A stretch of 64,000 nt of DNA from Isurus oxyrinchus. Its lineage: Eukaryota. The notes under the pieces are model-generated. The model did no database searches. It was given only the letters and a program-made list of their open reading frames with translations, and was not told the origin of the DNA. This document shows, piece after piece, positions 1-56,264 of this stretch (position 1 is its first letter; each line of letters opens with the position of its first letter). The position numbers and the translations under genes were made by a program. The DNA lies in NCBI GenBank assembly GCA_026770705.1, contig JANJGN010000210.1, positions 744,001 to 808,000 of the forward strand. The letters run 5' to 3'.

Positions 1-859
1 AAGGAGAAATATTATCTGAATGTATTTCAATCAGCATTTGTTTGGAAAAAAAACATAATTTCTTCTTTCAATAGGTTTAATTTTTCTCCAATTCCATTTA
101 TTTTGATATATTTACATTTAGTTTCATTTTATTTCTCCATTTCCTTTGTGCAGTTTGTGCTTCTTGCATGGAAACAGAGCTATCGTGGGAACTTGCCCCA
201 AAGTCTCTCAGTTGTCTGTTGGGTTCAGTCTGTTCCGTTTCCGCAGTGGTTTTACTGTTATTCACTGGCAACTGCATCTTCCCCCTCTCTGACAATTTCA
301 AATTTGTTCCGTCCATTTACTGATTGACTGGTTGAAGTTTTATCAAAGTTTTACTTTACACAGTATCTGCCAGAAGAGGAATATTCCATTCTGTACAAAT
401 GATTTATGCTTGTGTATTTACTGCAGACCAGCCTCCATCCGCCCGAAATCTAATTGACCATTTCCAGTCAGCTCCCTGAGTCAGTCTGTTCCGTTCTCCC
501 TCCTTTATTTTCAAGTCTTCCCATAAATGTATCAAACCTCACTGCCCCAACCACTCCCTACGGCAGCAAGTTCCACATTCTGACCTGCCTGTTTTTACAC
601 TTCTTCTTCTTAATGTCATTATTTGTTCTGTTAGTGACTGTCTTATTCTAATGGCTCTAGGCTCACCCCCAAATAAGCAGCTTTTCCACAAGTACCCCAA
701 TGAACCCGTTCATAATTTAAACGATTTCCATGAATTCTCCTTTTCTTTCCCTGCTCTCCAGAGACAAGAGGCCCGGCCTGTTCAACCTCTCCACAGAGAT
801 GCAGATTATTCCTGATTTATTTTCTCAGGAGTGTAACAGATCAAAGCAGTTAATGTAAC

Positions 860-1395
860 AGATAGAAGCAGGAGCGGCCATATTACCTTTCAAACCTTTT
901 CTGCCATTCAATAATATCCTAACTCATCTCCTCGCTCAACATCACTTTGCCGCAATGTCCCCATATCCCTTGATTCTCTTAGCATCCTGAAATCCATTGT
1001 ACACTTCCTTTAATACACCCAACCACTGAGCATCCACAGCTCTCTGAGGAAGAGAATGTCAGAGATTCACAACAATGGCTTCACTGAAGAAATTTCTCTT
1101 CTTCTCATTCCTCATGGTCGAGTCCTTATTCTGAAACTGTGACCCCTAGTTATAAGCTCATCAGCCTGGGGAGACACCCACTGGCAATCTATCATGTCCT
1201 GAATATTAGGTGTTCTAATGAAATTACATCTCATTCATCTAAGCTCTCGGGAACATAGGCCCAGACGATTCAATCTCTTCTTTACGACAATCCCTTTATC
1301 TCAGGGATCAGCCTGATGAACGTTTGCTGCACGCCTTCCAAGGCATGTAGATCCTTCCTTAAGTAAGGAGACCAAAACTTTACACAGCATTTCAG
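860..1395 (-). mobile_element. CR1-type LINE, decayed 3' fragment
   Basis: Resembles the 3' end of the clearer CR1 copies in this window (e.g. 19260-20950); boundaries approximate. Confidence 0.7.
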
Positions 1396-2284
1396 ACTGG
1401 AGCCCATTTCAGTCCTTCCTTCCATAGACCTCACCAACCCCCCTGTGCTCAGATTGTACTTTGAATGGGCCAGAGATCCTCCAATCCTCTCCTTTTCGAT
1501 GAATTATTTATTGCTGCTTCTAAATGAACATTCCCCCCATTTACAACTTACAATTGTTTCCTTATGTTCCCTGTTCTCCTTTATAAGATTAATGCATCAT
1601 CCTCACTTTCTCACTGCACTGTGTTGTTCCACACACAGTAATCAGGGATACAGATAAATTACAGCAATCACATCTCTCAAACATCTACATTCAATATAGA
1701 GAAGTATCTGCAGTTCCAAACCTTCATATTTCAGTCTGAGGGCGGAAAAGTAGGAAATTGTTTGGTTATATGAAAGAAATGGCGGGGACAATGTCGTTAA
1801 TTTCAGTCACTGATTGTCCAATAATAAAATTCTATCTGGGCCCACATCAGGATCTCTTATATCTGAAGCCCGTTTTGTCACTCTCCCGTTTTTCTCCCGG
1901 GTGAGGTATTGAACTGGCCGCAGTTGTTTGAGTTTATTCACCAGGTGCCTCATTCACATTGCGCGGCTCGGACTGCAATCTGCTGACCAGGAGAGAGCTC
2001 TGCGACTCCGCTCCCGGAATCGAAAGGGACAGACCGTGCTCCCTCAGTCACAGGTAACACCGGGAGTGGAGTCCGGATTGTCGACAATCTGCGCTCATTA
2101 AAAGTGATTCAGAGTGTAAGAGTCCGTGATGTTCATGGTGTCCCCGATGTGCCCGTTACACTAATGGTGCTCCAGATTCCGTCAACTCCCACATCCCACC
2201 CAAATTCTACTGATATCAATAATAAACTGTCGGTGAACGTTACCCGGGACAGGCTGTAAGCTGGTGGGGTTTGCAGTCACTTAC

Positions 2285-2337
2285 CGGCTGTGACAGTCAC
2301 CACTGTCCCGGATCCATCCGCATAATCAGTAAACCAT
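2285..2337 (-). other. NAR-type (NAR-TCR-like) J gene segment, WFTDYADGSGTVVTVTA
   Basis: Minus strand reads a tgg ttt act gat tat gcg gat gga tcc ggg aca gtg gtg act gtc aca gcc g|gtaagt: G-x-G-T-x-V-T-V motif, phase-1 GT donor and an upstream 23-RSS. Confidence 0.9.
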
Positions 2338-2376
2338 CACAGTGACACCGCTCTCAGTCTCCCCGGTACAACAACC
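2338..2376 (-). promoter_or_regulatory. J recombination signal sequence, 23-bp spacer
   Basis: Minus strand: GGTTGTTGT + 23 nt (accggggagactgagagcggtgt) + CACTGTG, abutting the J. Confidence 0.9.
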
Positions 2377-2694
2377 ACCGACACCTCAACCTGCCGGGAA
2401 CTCATCATCACCAGACAGTAGAAACTGCACAAATATTCAGTGGATTTAAATAAATAAACAATATTCAATGTTTCAAAGTCTCTGTCGGTTCAAACTGTTC
2501 TTTGTGAGGCCCTGAGATCTGAGTAAATGGTCCCGGAAACGAGATGTTCGCTTCATATAAACAGACAAAATTATTAAAGTAAGAGAACTGAATGGTGGAA
2601 ATTACAATGAAATGTAACCATATCACAGCGATAATAACATCAGCCCAACAATTCACTATCCGGACCCGCAGAATTTATATTGTGACCGGACAGA

Positions 2695-2722
2695 GGTATT
2701 TGCTCAGGTCTCCCCCACTGTG
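2695..2722 (-). promoter_or_regulatory. RSS with 12-bp spacer 3' of the NAR-type V
   Basis: Minus strand: CACAGTG + ggggagacctga (12 nt) + GCAAATACC. Confidence 0.85.
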
Positions 2723-3055
2723 ACTTCCCCATACTCCCATCTGTCGTACTGGTACTGAGCTTTACAGTAATAGGTGGCGGTGTCTTCAACTCTCACAACC
2801 CGATATTCCAGCGAAAATGTCTTTTCTGCTTTGTTCACCGACACAACAAACCCCCCCCCCCCCCCCCCCCCACCCCACCCCCTCGCTGGAGATCCGCTCC
2901 CACTCTGTCCCGGTCTGGGTTTGTCTGAAGAAAGCCCCGCCCGTCAAAGGACGAGCGTAAAAACCACCATAGAAAACGCAGGTATTGAATAGGGACTGAC
3001 ACTCCTTCCTGGTCACCGCTGCCGGGGTCTGTACCACTGACTGACTGAAAGATAC
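2723..3055 (-). pseudogene. NAR-type V exon (NAR-TCR V-like), frameshifted, with long D-like tail
   Basis: QSVVQTPAAVTRKECQSLFNTCVF...FFRQTQTGTEWERISS-(G run)-FVVSVNKAEKTFSLEYRVVRVEDTATYYCKAQYQYDRWEYGE. This is VNAR architecture (no CDR2) with an extra FR1 Cys (KEC), as described for NAR-TCR V. There is a +1 shift in the G run at 2851-2882, and the exon start is out of frame with a phase-1 leader. Confidence 0.85.
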
Positions 3056-3174
3056 CTGGAAATTAAACAAAGAGAGTTTAATGGACCATCAGAACCGAAC
3101 TACAGAACGGGGTTAAAACTCGAGCAGCTTTATATTAAATCCACACAATGTCGGTTTGTTTGATCGGTACTCAC

Positions 3175-3217
3175 GGGGTAAACAGACACACAGGGTGAAA
3201 ACAAGGAGGATTCCCAT
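3175..3217 (-). pseudogene. Leader exon of the NAR-type V (MGILLVFTLCVCLP)
   Basis: ATG at 3217, 43-nt hydrophobic exon, phase-1 GTGAGT donor; acceptor ttccag at 3056-3061. Confidence 0.85.
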
Positions 3218-3239
3218 CGCTCTGCTGCCTGGAGCTGAG

Positions 3240-3345
3240 GGTTTATATGACGGGGAGCTGGAGACTGCAGCCCTAGACTGCACTGGGAGACCGGACCTCA
3301 GAGCTGGACTGAAATATTTTAGGGGGATCGAGTTGATTTGCACAG
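3240..3345 (-). promoter_or_regulatory. Putative V promoter (TATA-like and octamer-like motifs)
   Basis: CATATAAA about 25-30 nt upstream of the leader ATG; GTGCAAAT (one mismatch to ATGCAAAT) at 3336-3343. Confidence 0.4.
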
Positions 3346-4334
3346 GGCGGTTCCGCTGAGATCATTGATTTGCCGCACGGTTCTCGGGTCGCTGGCTAAG
3401 TGTTGTGTGAATAAGCGACAGGTTTATGAGAGGAGGCTGCAATTTTCTGGCTCTACATTTGGATTGTGATCTGGATGTGAAAGCCCCTCCCACAATACTC
3501 TGGTGTACAGGGGTGGGGGAGGGGAGCTTTTCTTACTGCCAGTTGTGCTGCCGCCTTCCTTTCCCCGCAGTGATGAACTAGGAGGGCGGTGCATGTGTTT
3601 GTATTGGTGGTGTTTGTTTAAGGTGGAATGTGGGCCCAGGACACCTAGAATCCCCCGGCCCCGCTCTTTTCCCAATATTCCGGAGATTGTTTAACATCGC
3701 CCTGAACGGGCTGGCGGGACCTCAGTTAGACTTCTGATCTGAAGGTCGGCGCCTCAGGTTCGGCACCTACCCCGGAGCAGCAACTGGGGACAGGTTATAA
3801 TATGAAGTAGTCCAGTGGCATTACCAATATCCTGGCAGGTCTGCACAACATGCATATAAACTAATTATGGCTGATTAGTTCAATTCGCTGGATTGCGAGC
3901 TCGTGGTTCGGAATAATGCCAACAGTACGGGTTCTATTCGCATTGTGGCTGAGATAGGCTGGTGACCTGCCTGCGCCTGCGCGTGGAAGGCGATGGTAAA
4001 GCACCACAAACAAAGCTACCAAGAAAACAGCTCAGGTCGAAGCAACTGCAGAAAATCGGCCATCGGCAGGGCACACCTGAATAAATACAAGGAACAAACT
4101 CCCCTCCTCATTTAACAAATGATTCCCGCACCAGTCCTGCTTTGGGGTACATATAAAATGATGTTCCATTTCAGCCATGTTTGATTTCCAGGCTGGGAAT
4201 ATTCAGAATTTCCGTTTGAACGGACACAGATTGAATCGACACTCGGACGGGCAATGGACTTTGAGGAAACATTGTGCTTGGAGCTTGCTTTAAAATTCAC
4301 AGTCACCGCTTTCTGTTCTGAAAAATGTTTTTTT

Positions 4335-8486: not shown

Positions 8487-9010
8487 GAATATTGTCTGGG
8501 ATTCACTGCATCTCTGCCGCAGGGTGGGATTCATGTCACAGAAATACTCGGCAGTGCGGCAGATCAGGGCCTCAGCTCCAATGTACTGATGGTTTCTATC
8601 AAATGTAGAAAAGAATCAGACAATGATGTCGGTCTCCTTGTTTATATTTATACGAATAAGGGTGAATCAGCAGTTATGGATGTTGTCCGGGTTTCTGAAT
8701 ATACCAGAACATATAATGGTTCAGAAGATTTGTTTTCAAGATGCAGGTTATTGTGATGGCTTTTCACTCTTTGACCAAAGTTTCAGTTCCCGACTCGGCC
8801 TCTGTGCCTTGTCGCACATAAATATAACGTAAAGTAGCTGGGATAGATGTCACTATTATCGGGATCGTCATCACCATCATCTCAAGCAACATAATCATCA
8901 ACAGCAGCACTTCACGGTTAATAACATCTGGGTTACAGCAGTCAGGGGGAGAACGGACAGTTTTCTGGGAAGGAAATACTAAGAAATGATATAATGGAGA
9001 CGAACGGTAT
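8487..9010 (-). pseudogene. TCR V(alpha/delta)-like pseudogene with decayed leader and RSS
   Basis: Exon 8527-8807: GTEAESGTETLVKE*KAITITCILKTNLLNHYMFWYIQKPGQHP*LLI...TAEYFC. RSS CACCCTG-24 nt-ACAATATTC at 8487-8526. A 46-nt leader-like exon at 8965-9010 (ATA PFVSIISFLSISFP G) has lost its start codon and donor. Confidence 0.8.
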
Positions 9011-9655: not shown

Positions 9656-9800
9656 GGTCATGGTACAAGTTATGCAGAAGCCATTCTCACTAGGACTCAG
9701 CACACAGTTATACATGGCGCTGTCAGGGAGCTGCAGCACAGTCAAGGCGAAATCAGCTATATTATTGGGTGTTTCGAGAATTTTCCAGTTAACCGTGGAA
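9656..9800 (-). pseudogene. 3' part of a TCR V(alpha/delta)-like pseudogene with degenerate 23-RSS
   Basis: LETPNNIADFALTVLQLPDSAMYNCVLS resembles FR3 (LQLxDSAxYxC); followed by CCTAGTG-23 nt-ACCATGACC at 9656-9694. The 5' part is lost or lies in the gap. Confidence 0.7.
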
Positions 9801-9828: not shown

Positions 9829-10060
9829 NNNNNNNNNNNNNNNNNNNNNNNNNNNNNNNNNNNNNNNNNNNNNNNNNNNNNNNNNNNNNNNNNNNNNNNN
9901 NNNNNNNNNNNNNNNNNNNNNNNNNNNNNNNNNNNNNNNNNNNNNNNNNNNNNNNNNNNNNNNNNNNNNNNNNNNNNNNNNNNNNNNNNNNNNNNNNNNN
10001 NNNNNNNNNNNNNNNNNNNNNNNNNNNNNNNNNNNNNNNNNNNNNNNNNNNNNNNNNNNT
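9829..10060. other. Assembly gap (232 N)
   Basis: Run of n. Confidence 1.
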
Positions 10061-51529: not shown

Positions 51530-51575
51530 ATGAGGTCGGCGATTTCTCTCAGTTTGTTGCTGACTTTCTTATCCG
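51530..51575 (+). CDS. IGHV: IgM VH leader exon (MRSAISLSLLLTFLS-G)
   Basis: 46-nt hydrophobic exon with phase-1 GTGAGT donor; an in-frame upstream ATG is present at 51518. Confidence 0.93.
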
Positions 51576-51703
51576 GTGAGTAGTTTTTATTGTCCAAGTC
51601 TCTCACTGTTACTGTCTCAGTGTTAGTCTCTCTCTGGAATGTTACAGAGTCAAGAATTATTTCACCAGAATTAACCCTCGGGGTTTTTGATATATTTTTA
51701 CAG

Positions 51704-52008
51704 GTGTCCAGTCGGAGATTGTGTTGACTCAGCCAGAGGCAGAGACCGGGCGTCCCGGAGGCACCCTGACACTGACCTGTAAAACCAGCGGCTTCAATCT
51801 TGGCAGCTATTGGATGAACTGGGTCCGACAGGTTCCTGGACAGGGGCTGGAATGGCTCCTTGAGTACTATAGTTCATCCAACAACAACTACGCCCCAGGA
51901 ATTAAGAATCGATTTACTGCGTCCAAAGACACTTCAAGGAGCATCTTCTCCTTGGACATGACGAGCCTGAAGACTGAAGACACCGCCATCTATTACTGTG
52001 CAAGAGAC
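51704..52008 (+). CDS. IGHV: IgM VH exon, intact
   Basis: tttacag acceptor; [51 protein letters not shown]...[11 protein letters not shown]; open frame with conserved C, W, C. Confidence 0.97.
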
Positions 52009-52047
52009 CACAGCGAGAGGAACCAGGGCTGGACCCGAACAAAAACA
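52009..52047 (+). promoter_or_regulatory. VH 23-RSS
   Basis: CACAGCG + 23 nt + ACAAAAACA. Confidence 0.95.
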
Positions 52048-52415
52048 GATCGAGAGGGATTCAACAACTTCCATCGTAACCTGACGGTCAGTACTTGTTT
52101 TAAATGTAATATTAACTGTAATGATCAGAACCAGACAACAAGCCGCTTCTGACAAAAATAAAACAGCAAATTTAACAGTAAAACATAACAAACCAATTGA
52201 TATAATGGGCTGAGCTTTTGCTGTGTTTATATTTACTGTTAACAGTTTCCACAATTACAGTCCTGGATATAATGTTCATTTTAATATGTCTGATACTTGG
52301 AGGAGGGTCTCTGTTCATTGAGTTTTGTAAATTGCTGCATGAATTCTAAAGAAGATCAGAAGTAAACGTCTATTTGAAGTGAATATTAAGAAGCAGCATT
52401 GAACAGAGTGGGTGC

Positions 52416-52495
52416 AGTTTTTGTGCGGGTGTATTTCACTGTGATACTACAGCGGGTCACAGTGCTGTGCATAGCGACATCCTCATACAAAAACC
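52416..52495 (+). other. IGHD: DH1 segment (coding 52444-52457, ATACTACAGCGGGT) with 12/22 RSS
   Basis: AGTTTTTGT-12-CACTGTG / CACAGTG-22-ACAAAAACC. Confidence 0.95.
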
Positions 52496-52788
52496 TCAGA
52501 GAAGGAGTTTGTTTAAATTCGTGATCTCTAACACAGCAGGAACGACAAAGAAAATGATAGTTAAATAACATAATGGGTCGAGGTTTGCAAAAAGGTATTC
52601 CACTTTGTTCGTAGTGACGGACATGCCAAATCTGCAGAGATTTTGAAAGTATTCCAATCACATTTATAAATATAATGACCAGCACAGGCTGGAATATCTC
52701 ACTGATTCATTCTTAAGCGAGTCGGAATCGGGTTTTTGAGAAGGCAGTGAACTTAAATCTCTATATTTTACAGTGAACAGTCTGCCGC

Positions 52789-52857
52789 AGTATTTGACAT
52801 GGTGTGTCTCACTGTGATATACTGGATGGCACAGCAGTTACTGTCAATACAAAAACA
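52789..52857 (+). other. IGHD: DH2 segment (coding 52817-52829, ATATACTGGATGG) with 12/12 RSS
   Basis: AGTATTTGA-12-CACTGTG / CACAGCA-12-ACAAAAACA. Confidence 0.93.
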
Positions 52858-53187
52858 CCTCAGCACTAATTGAGTCTGCCTGGATCAGTGCTCGCTTTTA
52901 CAATCCAACTATATTTACAATGAAGTATTATTTTTGTTCAGCATTGACCAAAGCAACGTGATTTAAGATGGAAAAGTTGTGATAATTATCCATTCATCAG
53001 TTGGTGATTTCAATAACATCTTCATGTGCTACTCTGTGAATTATAAAAAATGAGGGTCATTGATGAATAGCGAAAGATATCCACAAACGCAAATATAATT
53101 TTGTGAGGATTCATCGTGATCTTCCTTTGCATCTGACTTATGAATATTTAGAATAATGGTGGATTTCTGTCTTTTTCGTGCAGGGAC

Positions 53188-53274
53188 GGTTATTGTATGT
53201 CACAGCCCAGGGAATGTAACACTGTGACGCTATGGACTACTGGGGACAAGGGACCATGGTGACGGTGACTGCAG
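53188..53274 (+). other. IGHJ: JH segment (coding 53227-53274, AMDYWGQGTMVTVTA) with 23-RSS
   Basis: GGTTATTGT-23-CACTGTG, WGxG motif, phase-1 GTAAGA donor. Confidence 0.97.
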
Positions 53275-56264
53275 GTAAGAACCATGCACTTTTTAAAAAC
53301 TGTACTATTTAAGTCTTTGCTTTACATTTTTGTCTATTTTAATAATTCACTCGTTCACTGAAATGTGGGTTTGGTGGATTCTGTGTGCAGATTTTTTTAC
53401 AATGCTTCATGCGATTCTGCTGAAATTGAGTTATATAATTCCGCTGTGTCTTGACAAAAAAGTGTTACTGAGGGATTGAGTCCCTGGTTGTTGTGATTTG
53501 GTGTTTATCTGCTGAGGATACTGTGTGACCGGGCTACTTGAAATGTCTAACGTTTGTTAAAACAGTTTGACGTTTCTGCAATGTTTAATCTCGGTGACAT
53601 CTAATGGCTGCGGGTTTTACCATCTGTTACACAGGGTTTAAATATGTCTGAAATCAAGCCTAATTTAAACAAAATGTGCTTAAGTTTCAATGTTAATTTA
53701 TTGAACATGTTCCGCCTACTCACAATGCTGGTGCCATTATTCCATATTTCTGTTTAGTTTAATTATTCATTCATTTGGTGACGATCGAGTTGTCTGGATT
53801 CGTTGTTGAGTTTTTCTTGCAATGTGACATTGAATTCTGTTGGAAGTATTTGTTCAATTGAGCTGCTTCTCCATGAAACAGGTTTCAGCCCCTCAGTGAT
53901 GTGATTCTGGTGTATTTTCTGCTGAGGAGATTGTGTGTCTGGGTGACTTTGAATTAGTAGAATTTGTGAAACGGTTTGGCGGTTCTGCATTGTTTCTGCT
54001 TTGTTTAAACTCGGTGACATTGAGCGGTTACACGTTTTGTGGTTGAATGGAAACAGTCTACGCGTTTGTATCTGCTTGAAGCGCGATTGTAGGCAGAAAA
54101 CAGGTTTCAGAAATGGGGAAAAAGCGTTTAACGATGCCTTAGAACATTTTGTTTTTATTTTAAGTGATAATTGCAAATTAAACTAAATCATGGATAATGA
54201 CGCTCATTCAGAACATAACTCGGTACTGCAATCAGAAACTATATAATTAACAAGTTTTCAAATTGTAAAGTAAAATGAATATAATTCAAACAATTATAAT
54301 ATGGTAATATTTCTCCATATTGACGGAACAACTTTCATATTAACATAATTGCTCATTAATCGTCTTTCACAATTCTGCTGTGCACTGCGCACTATTAAGA
54401 TGATAGGAAAAGTTTTTAGGCTGGAAACATTTTGTGATTATGTATTAAAAAAATCAATAAGAATATACTGATTCTACAGAATTGTTCAGATTCACAAGAG
54501 ATTTTGAATTATTTTTTTAGATCCCTGATAACCTTTATCTTAAAATCTTAAAACCTTATCTTAAAGACTTAAAGAGGAGTTTGACATTGCAGTTTGGCAA
54601 TATGTGTATCCGTTTATTACAACCTTTCTGTGCAACCAGAGCCGCATTATTCCTTCAATGTCATTGGGATTTGGATAGCGAGATAATTGTCACTAGTTTA
54701 ATCTTAAACAGTTTTTTGGGGGTAGAATTTGCTGGCAGTAAATGAATTGTTCTTACATTTTCTTGAAATGTAGGAAGGTGCAGACTGCATATGAATAGAG
54801 ATTGACAAGTAAAAGCTTGAAATTCGAACAGATTAATTTAATTGCAAACATTAATATTAGTTTTGAGCTTAATAACAATACCTCCCATAGTTGTGCTGGA
54901 CACAGAATAGAATTATAGGGGAAGAACAGATTATATCTGAGATTCATGCTTAATTCTTATTAAATGTTAAATTGAAGAACAAAATCTCGAATCCTTTTGC
55001 TGGTTATATTTCAGTGGCGCAGATGATCTGAATGAATTGTTCTCATCAAGTTTTATACTGATCAATTTGGATCTTCTTTCAATGAACAACATATTTAACC
55101 ATTAAATTATAGGGATTGTTATCTAGGAAGCACTTTTATTGTTAAGTAACTGCTAGGAACATTTTTTACATATAGCTTGGAATTAAGACAAGTTTGCTTT
55201 AACCAACAGATGGTGTTACAGCCCATCGACAGTTAATGTGATGTGACCCCCGGCCATATTTGAAAATATTTAAAATATTCCACTCATAAAGTCATCGTGT
55301 GAATTACTCGATGAGAATAGATGGAATTTATGATTTCTCAATGCGTTCAGAAACACGCATAGTTTACAATTTTGTACGTTAAAACAGAGCAGTGGAAGTA
55401 AAAGTAAAATAGTAAATAATGATTAGATTTAAGTAAAATTGATATACTTCTCTGAATGTTACCATCCGGTAATTTCAAGTTTATTGTTCAACATTGTTTC
55501 AGTGTCAGGTTGATTTAAATAAACCCCAATTATTTCACAAAGTACCAGGGAGAAACAAGTTTTCAATTATTGAAAACCATTTTTAATATTATAGAGTAGA
55601 AATCAGCTAACAAGAAAATGAATTGACAATAACAAGATAATTAACTTACAAGATAATATTAGTGAAAATTAATTCAACATAAATAAACTCCAACAATTAA
55701 GTAGTCATTATAATGAATGCAAAATCTCAAAGGGTGGAGAGAATTTTTAATTGTATCCAAAATGAATTTAGAAAAGAATACTTCCTTACTCAGCTGTGCT
55801 CAGCTCGATAAGGTGTTTCGCCTTGATGATTTTCTTGATTATATTTATATCTACAATCACATCAAATCAGTGGGTAATCGATTTTCAATGTGACTATTTC
55901 CTGATTTGTTTAATTCTTACCTTGTCATTGAGTTTCTGTTACGGACATGAAATTACCCTGAATCTGTCATATTTAATGTGCTCATTTTCAGGGTAACTTA
56001 AATCTTACATTGTTTGGAGATTTGAGGCAGACAGGGAGAATTAAATGGAGTTCAAAGGGAGTTTTAAAATGAAAATCAGATTAATTTCAAAGAAGTTATA
56101 GAATAATTGTAGTAAATTGACCATTGATCAATTAGAATCAAACAGCTTGAATAAAATGGACAGATTGAACAGATCTATCTGCTGGGAACTCACTTGTTGC
56201 ATCATTTATGTCTGTTCTGTGCCTGTGCGCGTGGTCACTATGCTGGGACCAGGATTCTGACATA

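What the first reader, a model, noticed from the sequence alone, without database searches (positions are those of the whole stretch)
2695..2766. NAR-type V ends in a 12-RSS with a 41-nt germline CDR3 tail: apparent germline-joined V-D
Seen: 41 nt follow the YYC cysteine codon (KAQYQYDRWEYGE), including a CAGTAC-CAGTAC duplication and a G-rich D-like end. These are followed by a 12-spacer RSS. The J about 350 bp away has a 23-RSS, and I find no RSS-flanked D between them. Known: shark IgH, IgNAR and TCR V segments normally carry a 23-RSS and need 12-RSS D segments, and germline-joined VD/VDJ genes occur in shark Ig clusters. Inference: a V-D join was fixed in the germline so that the D's 3' 12-RSS now follows the V, giving a one-step V(D)-to-J cassette. 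I do not recall germline joining being described for NAR-TCR cassettes.
Basis: partly seen in the sequence, partly recalled or inferred. Interest (0 to 1): 0.8.

Follow-up and report, generated by a model that had tools for sequence, protein, structure and literature searches.

The report
Germline V-D fused shark NAR-TCR cassette
In this shark T-cell-receptor region, an antibody-like "NAR" V gene already has its D piece fused on in inherited DNA, and a related shark still has that same D piece free; this is a clean trace of gene-joining in germ cells, but this copy looks dead.

Summary
On the minus strand a NAR-TCR-type V (leader 3217-3175, V exon 3055-2723) carries 41 nt after the Cys codon. 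A perfect 12-RSS follows (2722-2695). It faces a J with a 23-RSS, 371 nt away heptamer to heptamer. There is no RSS-flanked D between them.

The germline V-D fusion reading is supported by three results:
- **Free D in a relative.** Contigs from two runs of a related shark (organism A) match the RSS, 77-79 nt of its flank and the last 17 nt of the tail. They then continue into a second 12-RSS. This is a free 12-D-12 segment.
- **Normal V end.** NAR-TCR V genes of other sharks end 7-8 codons after the Cys and are directly followed by a heptamer. Two of them show an inferred 22-23-nt spacer.
- **Flush junction.** The tail is therefore V (24 nt) plus D (17 nt), with no apparent loss or addition. 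That is what cutting at heptamer borders would give.

An independent run (organism B) bridges the fused junction exactly, at single-copy depth, so the arrangement is germline.

This copy is probably a pseudogene. It has two frameshifts, one inside a 21-G run, and I found no supporting delta V in the remaining 2.3 kb.

The scan has already reported at least eight D-less NAR-TCR cassettes elsewhere in this genome. The new points here are the free-D counterpart and the flush junction.

The parts
3175..3217 (-). Leader exon (MGILLVFTLCVCLP plus 1 nt), followed by a GTGAGT donor
   Evidence: It is identical to the leader of the basking shark model P0004.
2723..3055 (-). NAR-TCR-type V exon with the fused D at its 3' end. 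As assembled, the leader, the N-terminal half and the C-terminal half lie in three different frames.
   Evidence: The C-terminal half matches Pfam V-set. Identity to shark NAR-TCR V proteins is 66-91%.
2851..2885 (-). G-rich expansion (GAGGGGGTGGGGTG followed by 21 G) in place of the conserved GGR codons of ..ISSGGRFVV... It adds about 25 nt and shifts the frame.
   Evidence: Read contigs break here, so its true length is not verified.
2740..2763 (-). V-derived part of the tail, 24 nt (KAQYQYDR)
   Evidence: It has the same length as the 8 codons before the heptamer in P0011, P0045, P0046, P0048, P0051, P0053, P0057 and P0062. P0003 ends at 22 nt.
2723..2739 (-). D-derived part of the tail, 17 nt: TGGGAGTATGGGGAAGT
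   Evidence: In organism A contigs this piece is bounded by a heptamer on both sides, so it is a free D there.
2695..2722 (-). 12-RSS (CACAGTG / 12 / GCAAATACC). This is the former 3' RSS of the D.
   Evidence: It is shared with the free-D contigs of organism A.
2377..2694 (-). D-J intervening DNA, with no RSS-like site
   Evidence: Organism A contigs cover parts of it with about 1-3% differences.
2338..2376 (-). 23-RSS of the J (GGTTGTTGT / 23 / CACTGTG)
2285..2337 (-). J segment (..YADGSGTVVTVTA) ending in phase 1, with a GTAAGT donor at 2284-2279
   Evidence: The J peptide is the same as in P0004, where it is spliced to a supporting delta V.

Best explanation
This is a NAR-TCR cassette in which V and its single D were joined in the germline.

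Proposed history (inferred):
- The ancestral layout was V-23RSS ... 12RSS-D-12RSS ... 23RSS-J.
- RAG-type cleavage at the two heptamer borders removed the V 23-RSS, the spacer DNA and the D 5' 12-RSS.
- The two coding ends were sealed flush. This left V (24 nt after the Cys) plus D (17 nt), followed by the D's own 3' 12-RSS.

Expected working of an intact copy (inferred):
- The 12-RSS faces the J 23-RSS, so the NAR domain could be completed in a T cell by one deletional V(D)-to-J join.
- A flush join is in frame and gives CKAQYQYDRWEYGEVWFTDYADGSGTVVTVTA.
- The CDR3 would therefore be largely germline-fixed, with a single junction.
- The J donor would then splice to the next V-type exon.

This particular copy is most likely a pseudogene. 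It has two frameshifts in the V, and no recognisable supporting delta V lies within 2.3 kb.

Shown: the anatomy, the free-D counterpart in a related shark, and the germline status. Inferred: RAG as the agent, the timing, and any use in T cells.
For: - **Anatomy:**
- **Free D:**, table 8 records 8 and 14, and the loose end at 2739 (CACAGTGTTACAAGTCAGTATAAAATC). A 31-mer assembly cannot bridge 17 nt plus a heptamer unless real reads carry both RSSs.
- **Depth in organism A:** in X1 the bin 2652-2715 has mean depth 30.0, the same as the free-D contig's depth of 30. In X3 the values are 113.1 and 107.3. I see no fused copy with this flank in organism A.
- **Germline status:** X4 contigs 19-21 (2649-2719, 2708-2771, 2768-2838) have 0 differences at depth 24-46 and bridge the fusion.
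- **Normal V end:** 7-8 codons plus a heptamer in 9 RefSeq models from Cetorhinus, Hemiscyllium, Chiloscyllium and Amblyraja, and in the V-only ORFs P0002 and P0003.
- **V-side spacer in other sharks:** 22 nt inferred in P0053 and 23 nt in P0059.
- **NAR-TCR hallmarks named in PMC1845163:** leader, Cys in the a-b loop (RKECQS), and no Trp in the WYRK position (FFRQ). All three are present.
- **Precedent:** partly joined VD-J clusters attributed to RAG in germ cells are established for shark Ig (PMC4279169; PMC2193156).
Against: - The organism A contig could come from a close paralogue rather than the orthologue. It shows 3 differences in about 101-103 nt, which is within the 0-4% spread of other organism A contigs here.
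- All runs were Logan contigs, not raw reads.
- Flush joints with no trimming are a minority among RAG coding joints.
- Use of such cassettes in T cells is not shown. The one RNA-like run laid gave nothing (X18).
Confidence: 0.8

Rival explanations
1. This is a natively D-less V-J cassette. The V always had a long coding end and a 12-RSS, and no fusion ever took place.
For: Many cassettes of this genome share the V-12RSS / 23RSS-J layout, according to the scan's earlier notes. P0001 and P0023 (Mustelus-like) also show a long tail with an inferred 12-RSS.
Against: The last 17 nt of the tail, its RSS and its flank exist as a free 12-D-12 element in organism A. The first 24 nt equal the full V end seen before a heptamer in many species. 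A long native V would not split exactly at those two borders.
Confidence: 0.07
2. The fused form is older, and the split form in organism A arose by insertion of an RSS-ended fragment (RAG transposition or reintegration) into a long V.
For: The direction of change between organisms A and B is not polarised by an outgroup at this exact locus.
Against: The split V (8 codons plus heptamer, 22-23 spacer) is spread across sharks and a skate, so split is the ancestral state of the family. Germline reintegration is far rarer than germline joining, which is documented in sharks (PMC2193156).
Confidence: 0.03
3. The fusion is a somatic lymphocyte rearrangement or an assembly artefact captured in the reference.
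For: The tissue of origin is unknown. The region is multi-copy, and the V contains a suspicious homopolymer.
Against: Independent run X4 bridges the junction with 0 differences at single-copy depth. A D-to-J join normally precedes V-to-D in somatic order. The scan reports many similar cassettes.
Confidence: 0.03

Closest known systems
Partly germline-joined (VD-J, VD-DJ) IgH clusters of sharks and skates
   Same: V and D are contiguous in inherited DNA, and the D's 3' RSS is kept and faces the J. The joining is attributed to RAG activity in germ cells (PMC4279169, PMC5192425, PMC2193156).
   Different: This case lies in a NAR-TCR cassette of the TCR delta region, not in an Ig cluster. The junction is flush, and a split counterpart is visible in a closely related species.
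Canonical NAR-TCR (Criscitiello et al. 2006, nurse shark; elephant shark in PMC1845163)
   Same: It has the same V hallmarks (leader, a-b loop Cys, no WYRK Trp), and its own J with a splice donor towards a supporting delta V.
   Different: The described receptor builds the NAR domain by a separate V-D-J rearrangement (PMC1845163, PMC5931798). Here only a V(D)-to-J step is left.
Marsupial TCR-mu germline-joined V and platypus D-less supporting V
   Same: It is a three-domain TCR chain in which one V domain has lost somatic steps through germline joining or D loss (PMC3457774).
   Different: In TCR-mu the membrane-proximal supporting V is pre-joined, by retrotransposition. Here the distal, antigen-binding NAR V is only partly joined, and in place.
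Germline-rearranged TCR genes of channel catfish
   Same: Rearranged TCR V(D)J sequence is present in the germline (PMC6170632).
   Different: Those are fully joined alpha and beta genes in a teleost. This is a partial VD join in a shark delta-linked cassette.

Membership tests
NAR-TCR V (NAR-TcRV) | Typical leader peptide on its own exon | tested here: met
   MGILLVFTLCVCLP at 3217-3175 with a GT donor. It is identical to P0004.
NAR-TCR V (NAR-TcRV) | Cysteine in the a-b loop and no Trp in the WYRK motif (criteria from PMC1845163) | tested here: met
   ..AAVTRKECQSL.. and ..GAFFRQTQ...
NAR-TCR V (NAR-TcRV) | Own J whose donor splices to a leaderless supporting delta V with a CDR1 Cys | tested here: inconclusive
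   The J and donor are present and match the J of P0004, which is spliced to such a delta V. No supporting V was detectable at window 1-2300 by tblastn or Pfam. The window ends 2.3 kb after the J.
Germline-joined (VD-J) antigen-receptor cluster | V and D coding sequence contiguous with no RSS between them; D 3' RSS retained and compatible with the J RSS | tested here: met
   24 nt + 17 nt tail, 12-RSS facing 23-RSS, no other RSS in between.
Germline-joined (VD-J) antigen-receptor cluster | A split counterpart exists (free RSS-D-RSS; V with its own RSS) | tested here: met
   A free 12-D-12 is present in organism A contigs from two studies. The V-plus-heptamer ends, and the 22-23 spacers, are inferred from protein read-through only.
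Germline-joined (VD-J) antigen-receptor cluster | Present in germline (non-lymphoid) DNA | tested here: inconclusive
   The junction is bridged exactly at single-copy depth in independent run X4, which argues for germline. The tissue of the runs is not known, and only contigs were laid, not raw reads.
Functional V gene segment | Open reading frame from the leader through the V | tested here: not met
   The leader (via the standard acceptor), the N-terminal half and the C-terminal half lie in three frames. The length of the 21-G run is unverified. The extra base at 3053 is not in a homopolymer.

The most novel reading that the evidence does not exclude
Germline V(D)J recombination has been acting recently and repeatedly on NAR-TCR cassettes in lamnid sharks. 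At this locus one species still has the free D and its relative has the flush VD join. A fully VDJ-joined NAR exon sits a few kb away, and VDJ-joined classes are shared by white and basking sharks. If so, these sharks would carry a graded series of cassettes (split, VD-J, VDJ) and a partly innate, pre-set gamma-delta-type receptor repertoire. The joining events could be dated between living species.
Probability: 0.3. Interest if true: 0.7.

Novelty: new member of a known kind. Interest (0 to 1): 0.5.

Why it matters
Germline joining of antigen-receptor genes is a textbook oddity of shark antibodies. How and when it happens has been hard to dissect, because H-chain junctions are very varied (PMC2193156).

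Here the split and joined states of what looks like the same locus are both visible in close relatives. The junction falls exactly at the two heptamer borders, which is about as direct a sequence trace of RAG-type cutting in the germline as one can get.

The case also extends the phenomenon to the NAR domain of a T-cell receptor. There it would reduce CDR3 diversity to one junction and fix a D reading frame. That bears on whether some NAR-TCRs are pre-set, innate-like receptors.

The weight of this copy is limited, because it appears to be a pseudogene.

Tried and rejected
- **Other NAR V copies in the window:** tblastn found none.
- **Supporting delta V downstream of the J:** nothing was found by tblastn with the P0004 delta V, even at very loose settings, or by Pfam on all open pieces. 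The V-like look of 2080-1640 and the heptamer near 1640 could not be substantiated.
- **An alternative splice acceptor to rescue the first frameshift:** my first idea (acceptor before 3044) was wrong. Only an acceptor before 3036, which would delete SFSQSV, restores the frame.
- **Word searches with the two V ORFs:** they gave only three short ENA proteins.
- **Expression:** the RNA-like run X18 laid nothing.
- **Literature:** Criscitiello 2006, Roux 1998 and Ott 2021 are not held. No held paper that names NAR-TCR describes its RSSs or a germline-joined form.
- **The big representative search:** not used. The family was not in doubt, and the claim does not rest on an absence of relatives.
- **The CAGTAC duplication as a junctional feature:** rejected; it is a family V-end motif.

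Full report
**What is there.** The feature lies on the minus strand.
- A leader exon (3217-3175, MGILLVFTLCVCLP, GTGAGT donor) is followed by an intron and a V exon (3055-2723).
- The V translation shows the NAR-TCR V hallmarks listed for nurse shark and elephant shark in PMC1845163: a leader, a Cys in the a-b loop (RKECQSL), and no Trp at the WYRK position (FFRQTQ).
- The V halves are 66-91% identical to shark NAR-TCR V proteins.
- The leader and the J peptide equal those of a basking shark RefSeq model, P0004, in which the J is spliced to a leaderless delta V with a CDR1 Cys.

**The observation.**
- After the Cys codon (2766-2764) come 41 nt (2763-2723).
- Next is CACAGTG (2722-2716), a 12-nt spacer and the nonamer GCAAATACC (2703-2695).
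- The J (2337-2285..WFTDYADGSGTVVTVTA, GTAAGT donor) is preceded by GGTTGTTGT, a 23-nt spacer and CACTGTG (2376-2338).
- The 318 nt between the nonamers contain no RSS-like site. Perfect-heptamer RSSs number 5 in the window against 0.05 in shuffles.

**Evidence for a V-D fusion.**

*1. A free D in a related shark.* I laid Logan contigs of four runs on 1500-3400.
- In two runs of organism A, from different studies, one contig matches 2637/2639-2739 with 3 differences.
- The match covers 77-79 nt of flank, the whole 12-RSS and the last 17 nt of the tail.
- Each contig then runs on for 27 nt; for X3 these are printed as CACAGTG TTACAAGTCAGT ATAAAATC.
- That is a second 12-RSS on the other side of the 17-nt piece TGGGAGTATGGGGAAGT, so the piece is a free 12-D-12 segment there.
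- The contigs were built from 31-nt words. Words that span a 17-nt D must contain parts of both RSSs, so this is not a graph chimera.
- In X1 the mean depth of bin 2652-2715 is 30.0, the same as that contig's depth of 30. In X3 the values are 113.1 and 107.3.
- So I see no copy with this flank in fused form in organism A. Contigs cannot prove absence.

*2. Where NAR-TCR V genes normally end.*
- A word search with P0004 returned 62 NAR-TCR gene models from a dozen sharks, a sawfish and a skate.
- Such models are predicted on unrearranged DNA, so many read into the RSS.
- Eight models show exactly 8 codons after the Cys and then HSD or HRD (CAC AGT GAx): KAQYRYDK|HSD, KAQYKYKT|HSD, KARYWDGT|HSD and others. 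A ninth shows 7 codons.
- Two short ORFs end in xQ-stop (xCA CAG TGA) 16-22 nt after the Cys.
- In P0053 the read-through HSD RPRLPV AQKL implies a 22-nt spacer and the nonamer ACAAAAACT. In P0059 a 23-nt spacer is implied.
- The family's normal V therefore ends about 24 nt after the Cys, and where readable it has a 23-type RSS. This part is inferred from protein, not seen as DNA.

*3. The tail decomposes exactly.*
- 24 nt (AAAGCTCAGTACCAGTACGACAGA, KAQYQYDR) is a full-length V end.
- 17 nt is the full-length free D.
- Nothing appears lost or added.
- The deletion therefore ran from heptamer border to heptamer border. This is the signature of RAG-type cleavage followed by a flush coding joint.

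**Germline or somatic.** Run X4 (organism B) holds three contigs with no differences (2649-2719, 2708-2771, 2768-2838) at depth 24-46. The second bridges the V-D junction. An independent data set at single-copy depth argues against a somatic clone or an assembly slip. The tissue is unknown, and no raw reads were available.

**Function.**
- The 12/23 pair allows a single deletional V(D)-to-J join. A flush join is in frame.
- This copy, however, is broken.
- With the standard acceptor the V exon starts GTATCT where relatives imply GTTCT. This puts the leader and the V N-terminal half in different frames.
- The near-invariant ISSGGRFVV is replaced by a G-rich stretch about 25 nt longer, which includes 21 G. 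This shifts the frame again.
- Read contigs break at the G run, so its length is unverified. The first shift is not in a homopolymer.
- No supporting delta V is detectable in the 2.3 kb left in the window.
I could not examine it.

**Context and knowledge.**
- Partly (VD-J) and fully joined Ig clusters, ascribed to RAG in germ cells, are established in cartilaginous fish (PMC4279169, PMC5192425, PMC2193156).
- Pre-joined or D-less V domains occur in mammalian TCR-mu (PMC3457774), and rearranged TCR genes occur in the catfish germline (PMC6170632).
- NAR-TCR is described as two separate VDJ rearrangements (PMC1845163, PMC5931798).
- The scan's own earlier notes list at least eight D-less NAR-TCR cassettes in this genome, all read as probable old VD fusions. 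So the class is not new to the scan.

**Limits.**
- Read laying gave contigs only.
- Orthology of the organism A contig is likely but not proven. It shows 3 differences in about 101-103 nt, which is within the spread of other organism A contigs here.

Noticed in passing
window 51531-53277, + strand: A complete, unjoined IgH-type cluster. It has a leader, then a VH ending ..YYCAR with a 23-RSS (heptamer at 52009). D1 is ATACTACAGCGGGT with 12 and 22 spacers, and D2 is ATATACTGGATGG with 12 and 12 spacers. The JH (AMDYWGQGTMVTVTA) has a 23-RSS and a splice donor. It is a useful in-window comparator for the split state.
   Followed up: partly
window 2715-2704 and 2364-2354, minus strand: The 12-nt spacer of the V(D) RSS (GGGGAGACCTGA) recurs with one deletion inside the 23-nt spacer of the J RSS. 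Only 3 of 5000 shuffles give such a match. I have no explanation.
   Followed up: partly
proteins P0013 (white shark) and P0017 (basking shark): Two RefSeq NAR-TCR models from different species share the identical CDR3 KAQYRYRCGSTVSKDAYED with no heptamer read-through. This implies a fully germline-joined VDJ NAR-TCR class older than the split of the two species.
   Followed up: partly
proteins P0005 (white shark) and P0006 (horn shark): These gene models string two NAR V-D-J domains before the supporting delta V. They could be stacked NAR exons or read-through between neighbouring cassettes.
   Followed up: no
window 2744, run X4 (loose ends): A contig follows the V up to ..TACGA and then reads AGAACACGGCGACGGGTCTCGG.., so there is another paralogue with a different continuation. 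P0001 and P0023 tails (..THGT..AHGT) carry a similar CAC GGC motif, followed by an inferred 12-RSS.
   Followed up: no
window 8653-8757 and 9695-9778, minus strand: Two TCR-V-like fragments (..ITITC..WYIQKPGQ.. with a stop, and ..LQLPDSAMYNCVLS) lie next to the N gap at 9829-10059.
   Followed up: no
window 33235 and 34461, + strand: Two similar sites of the form CACAGTG / 24 / ATAxAAACT lie 1.2 kb apart. They are probably copies of a repeat rather than gene segments.
   Followed up: no
window 2851-2871: A run of 21 G (C on the + strand) lies inside the V exon. Read contigs of all runs break at 2839-2888, so its length in the assembly is unverified.
   Followed up: partly
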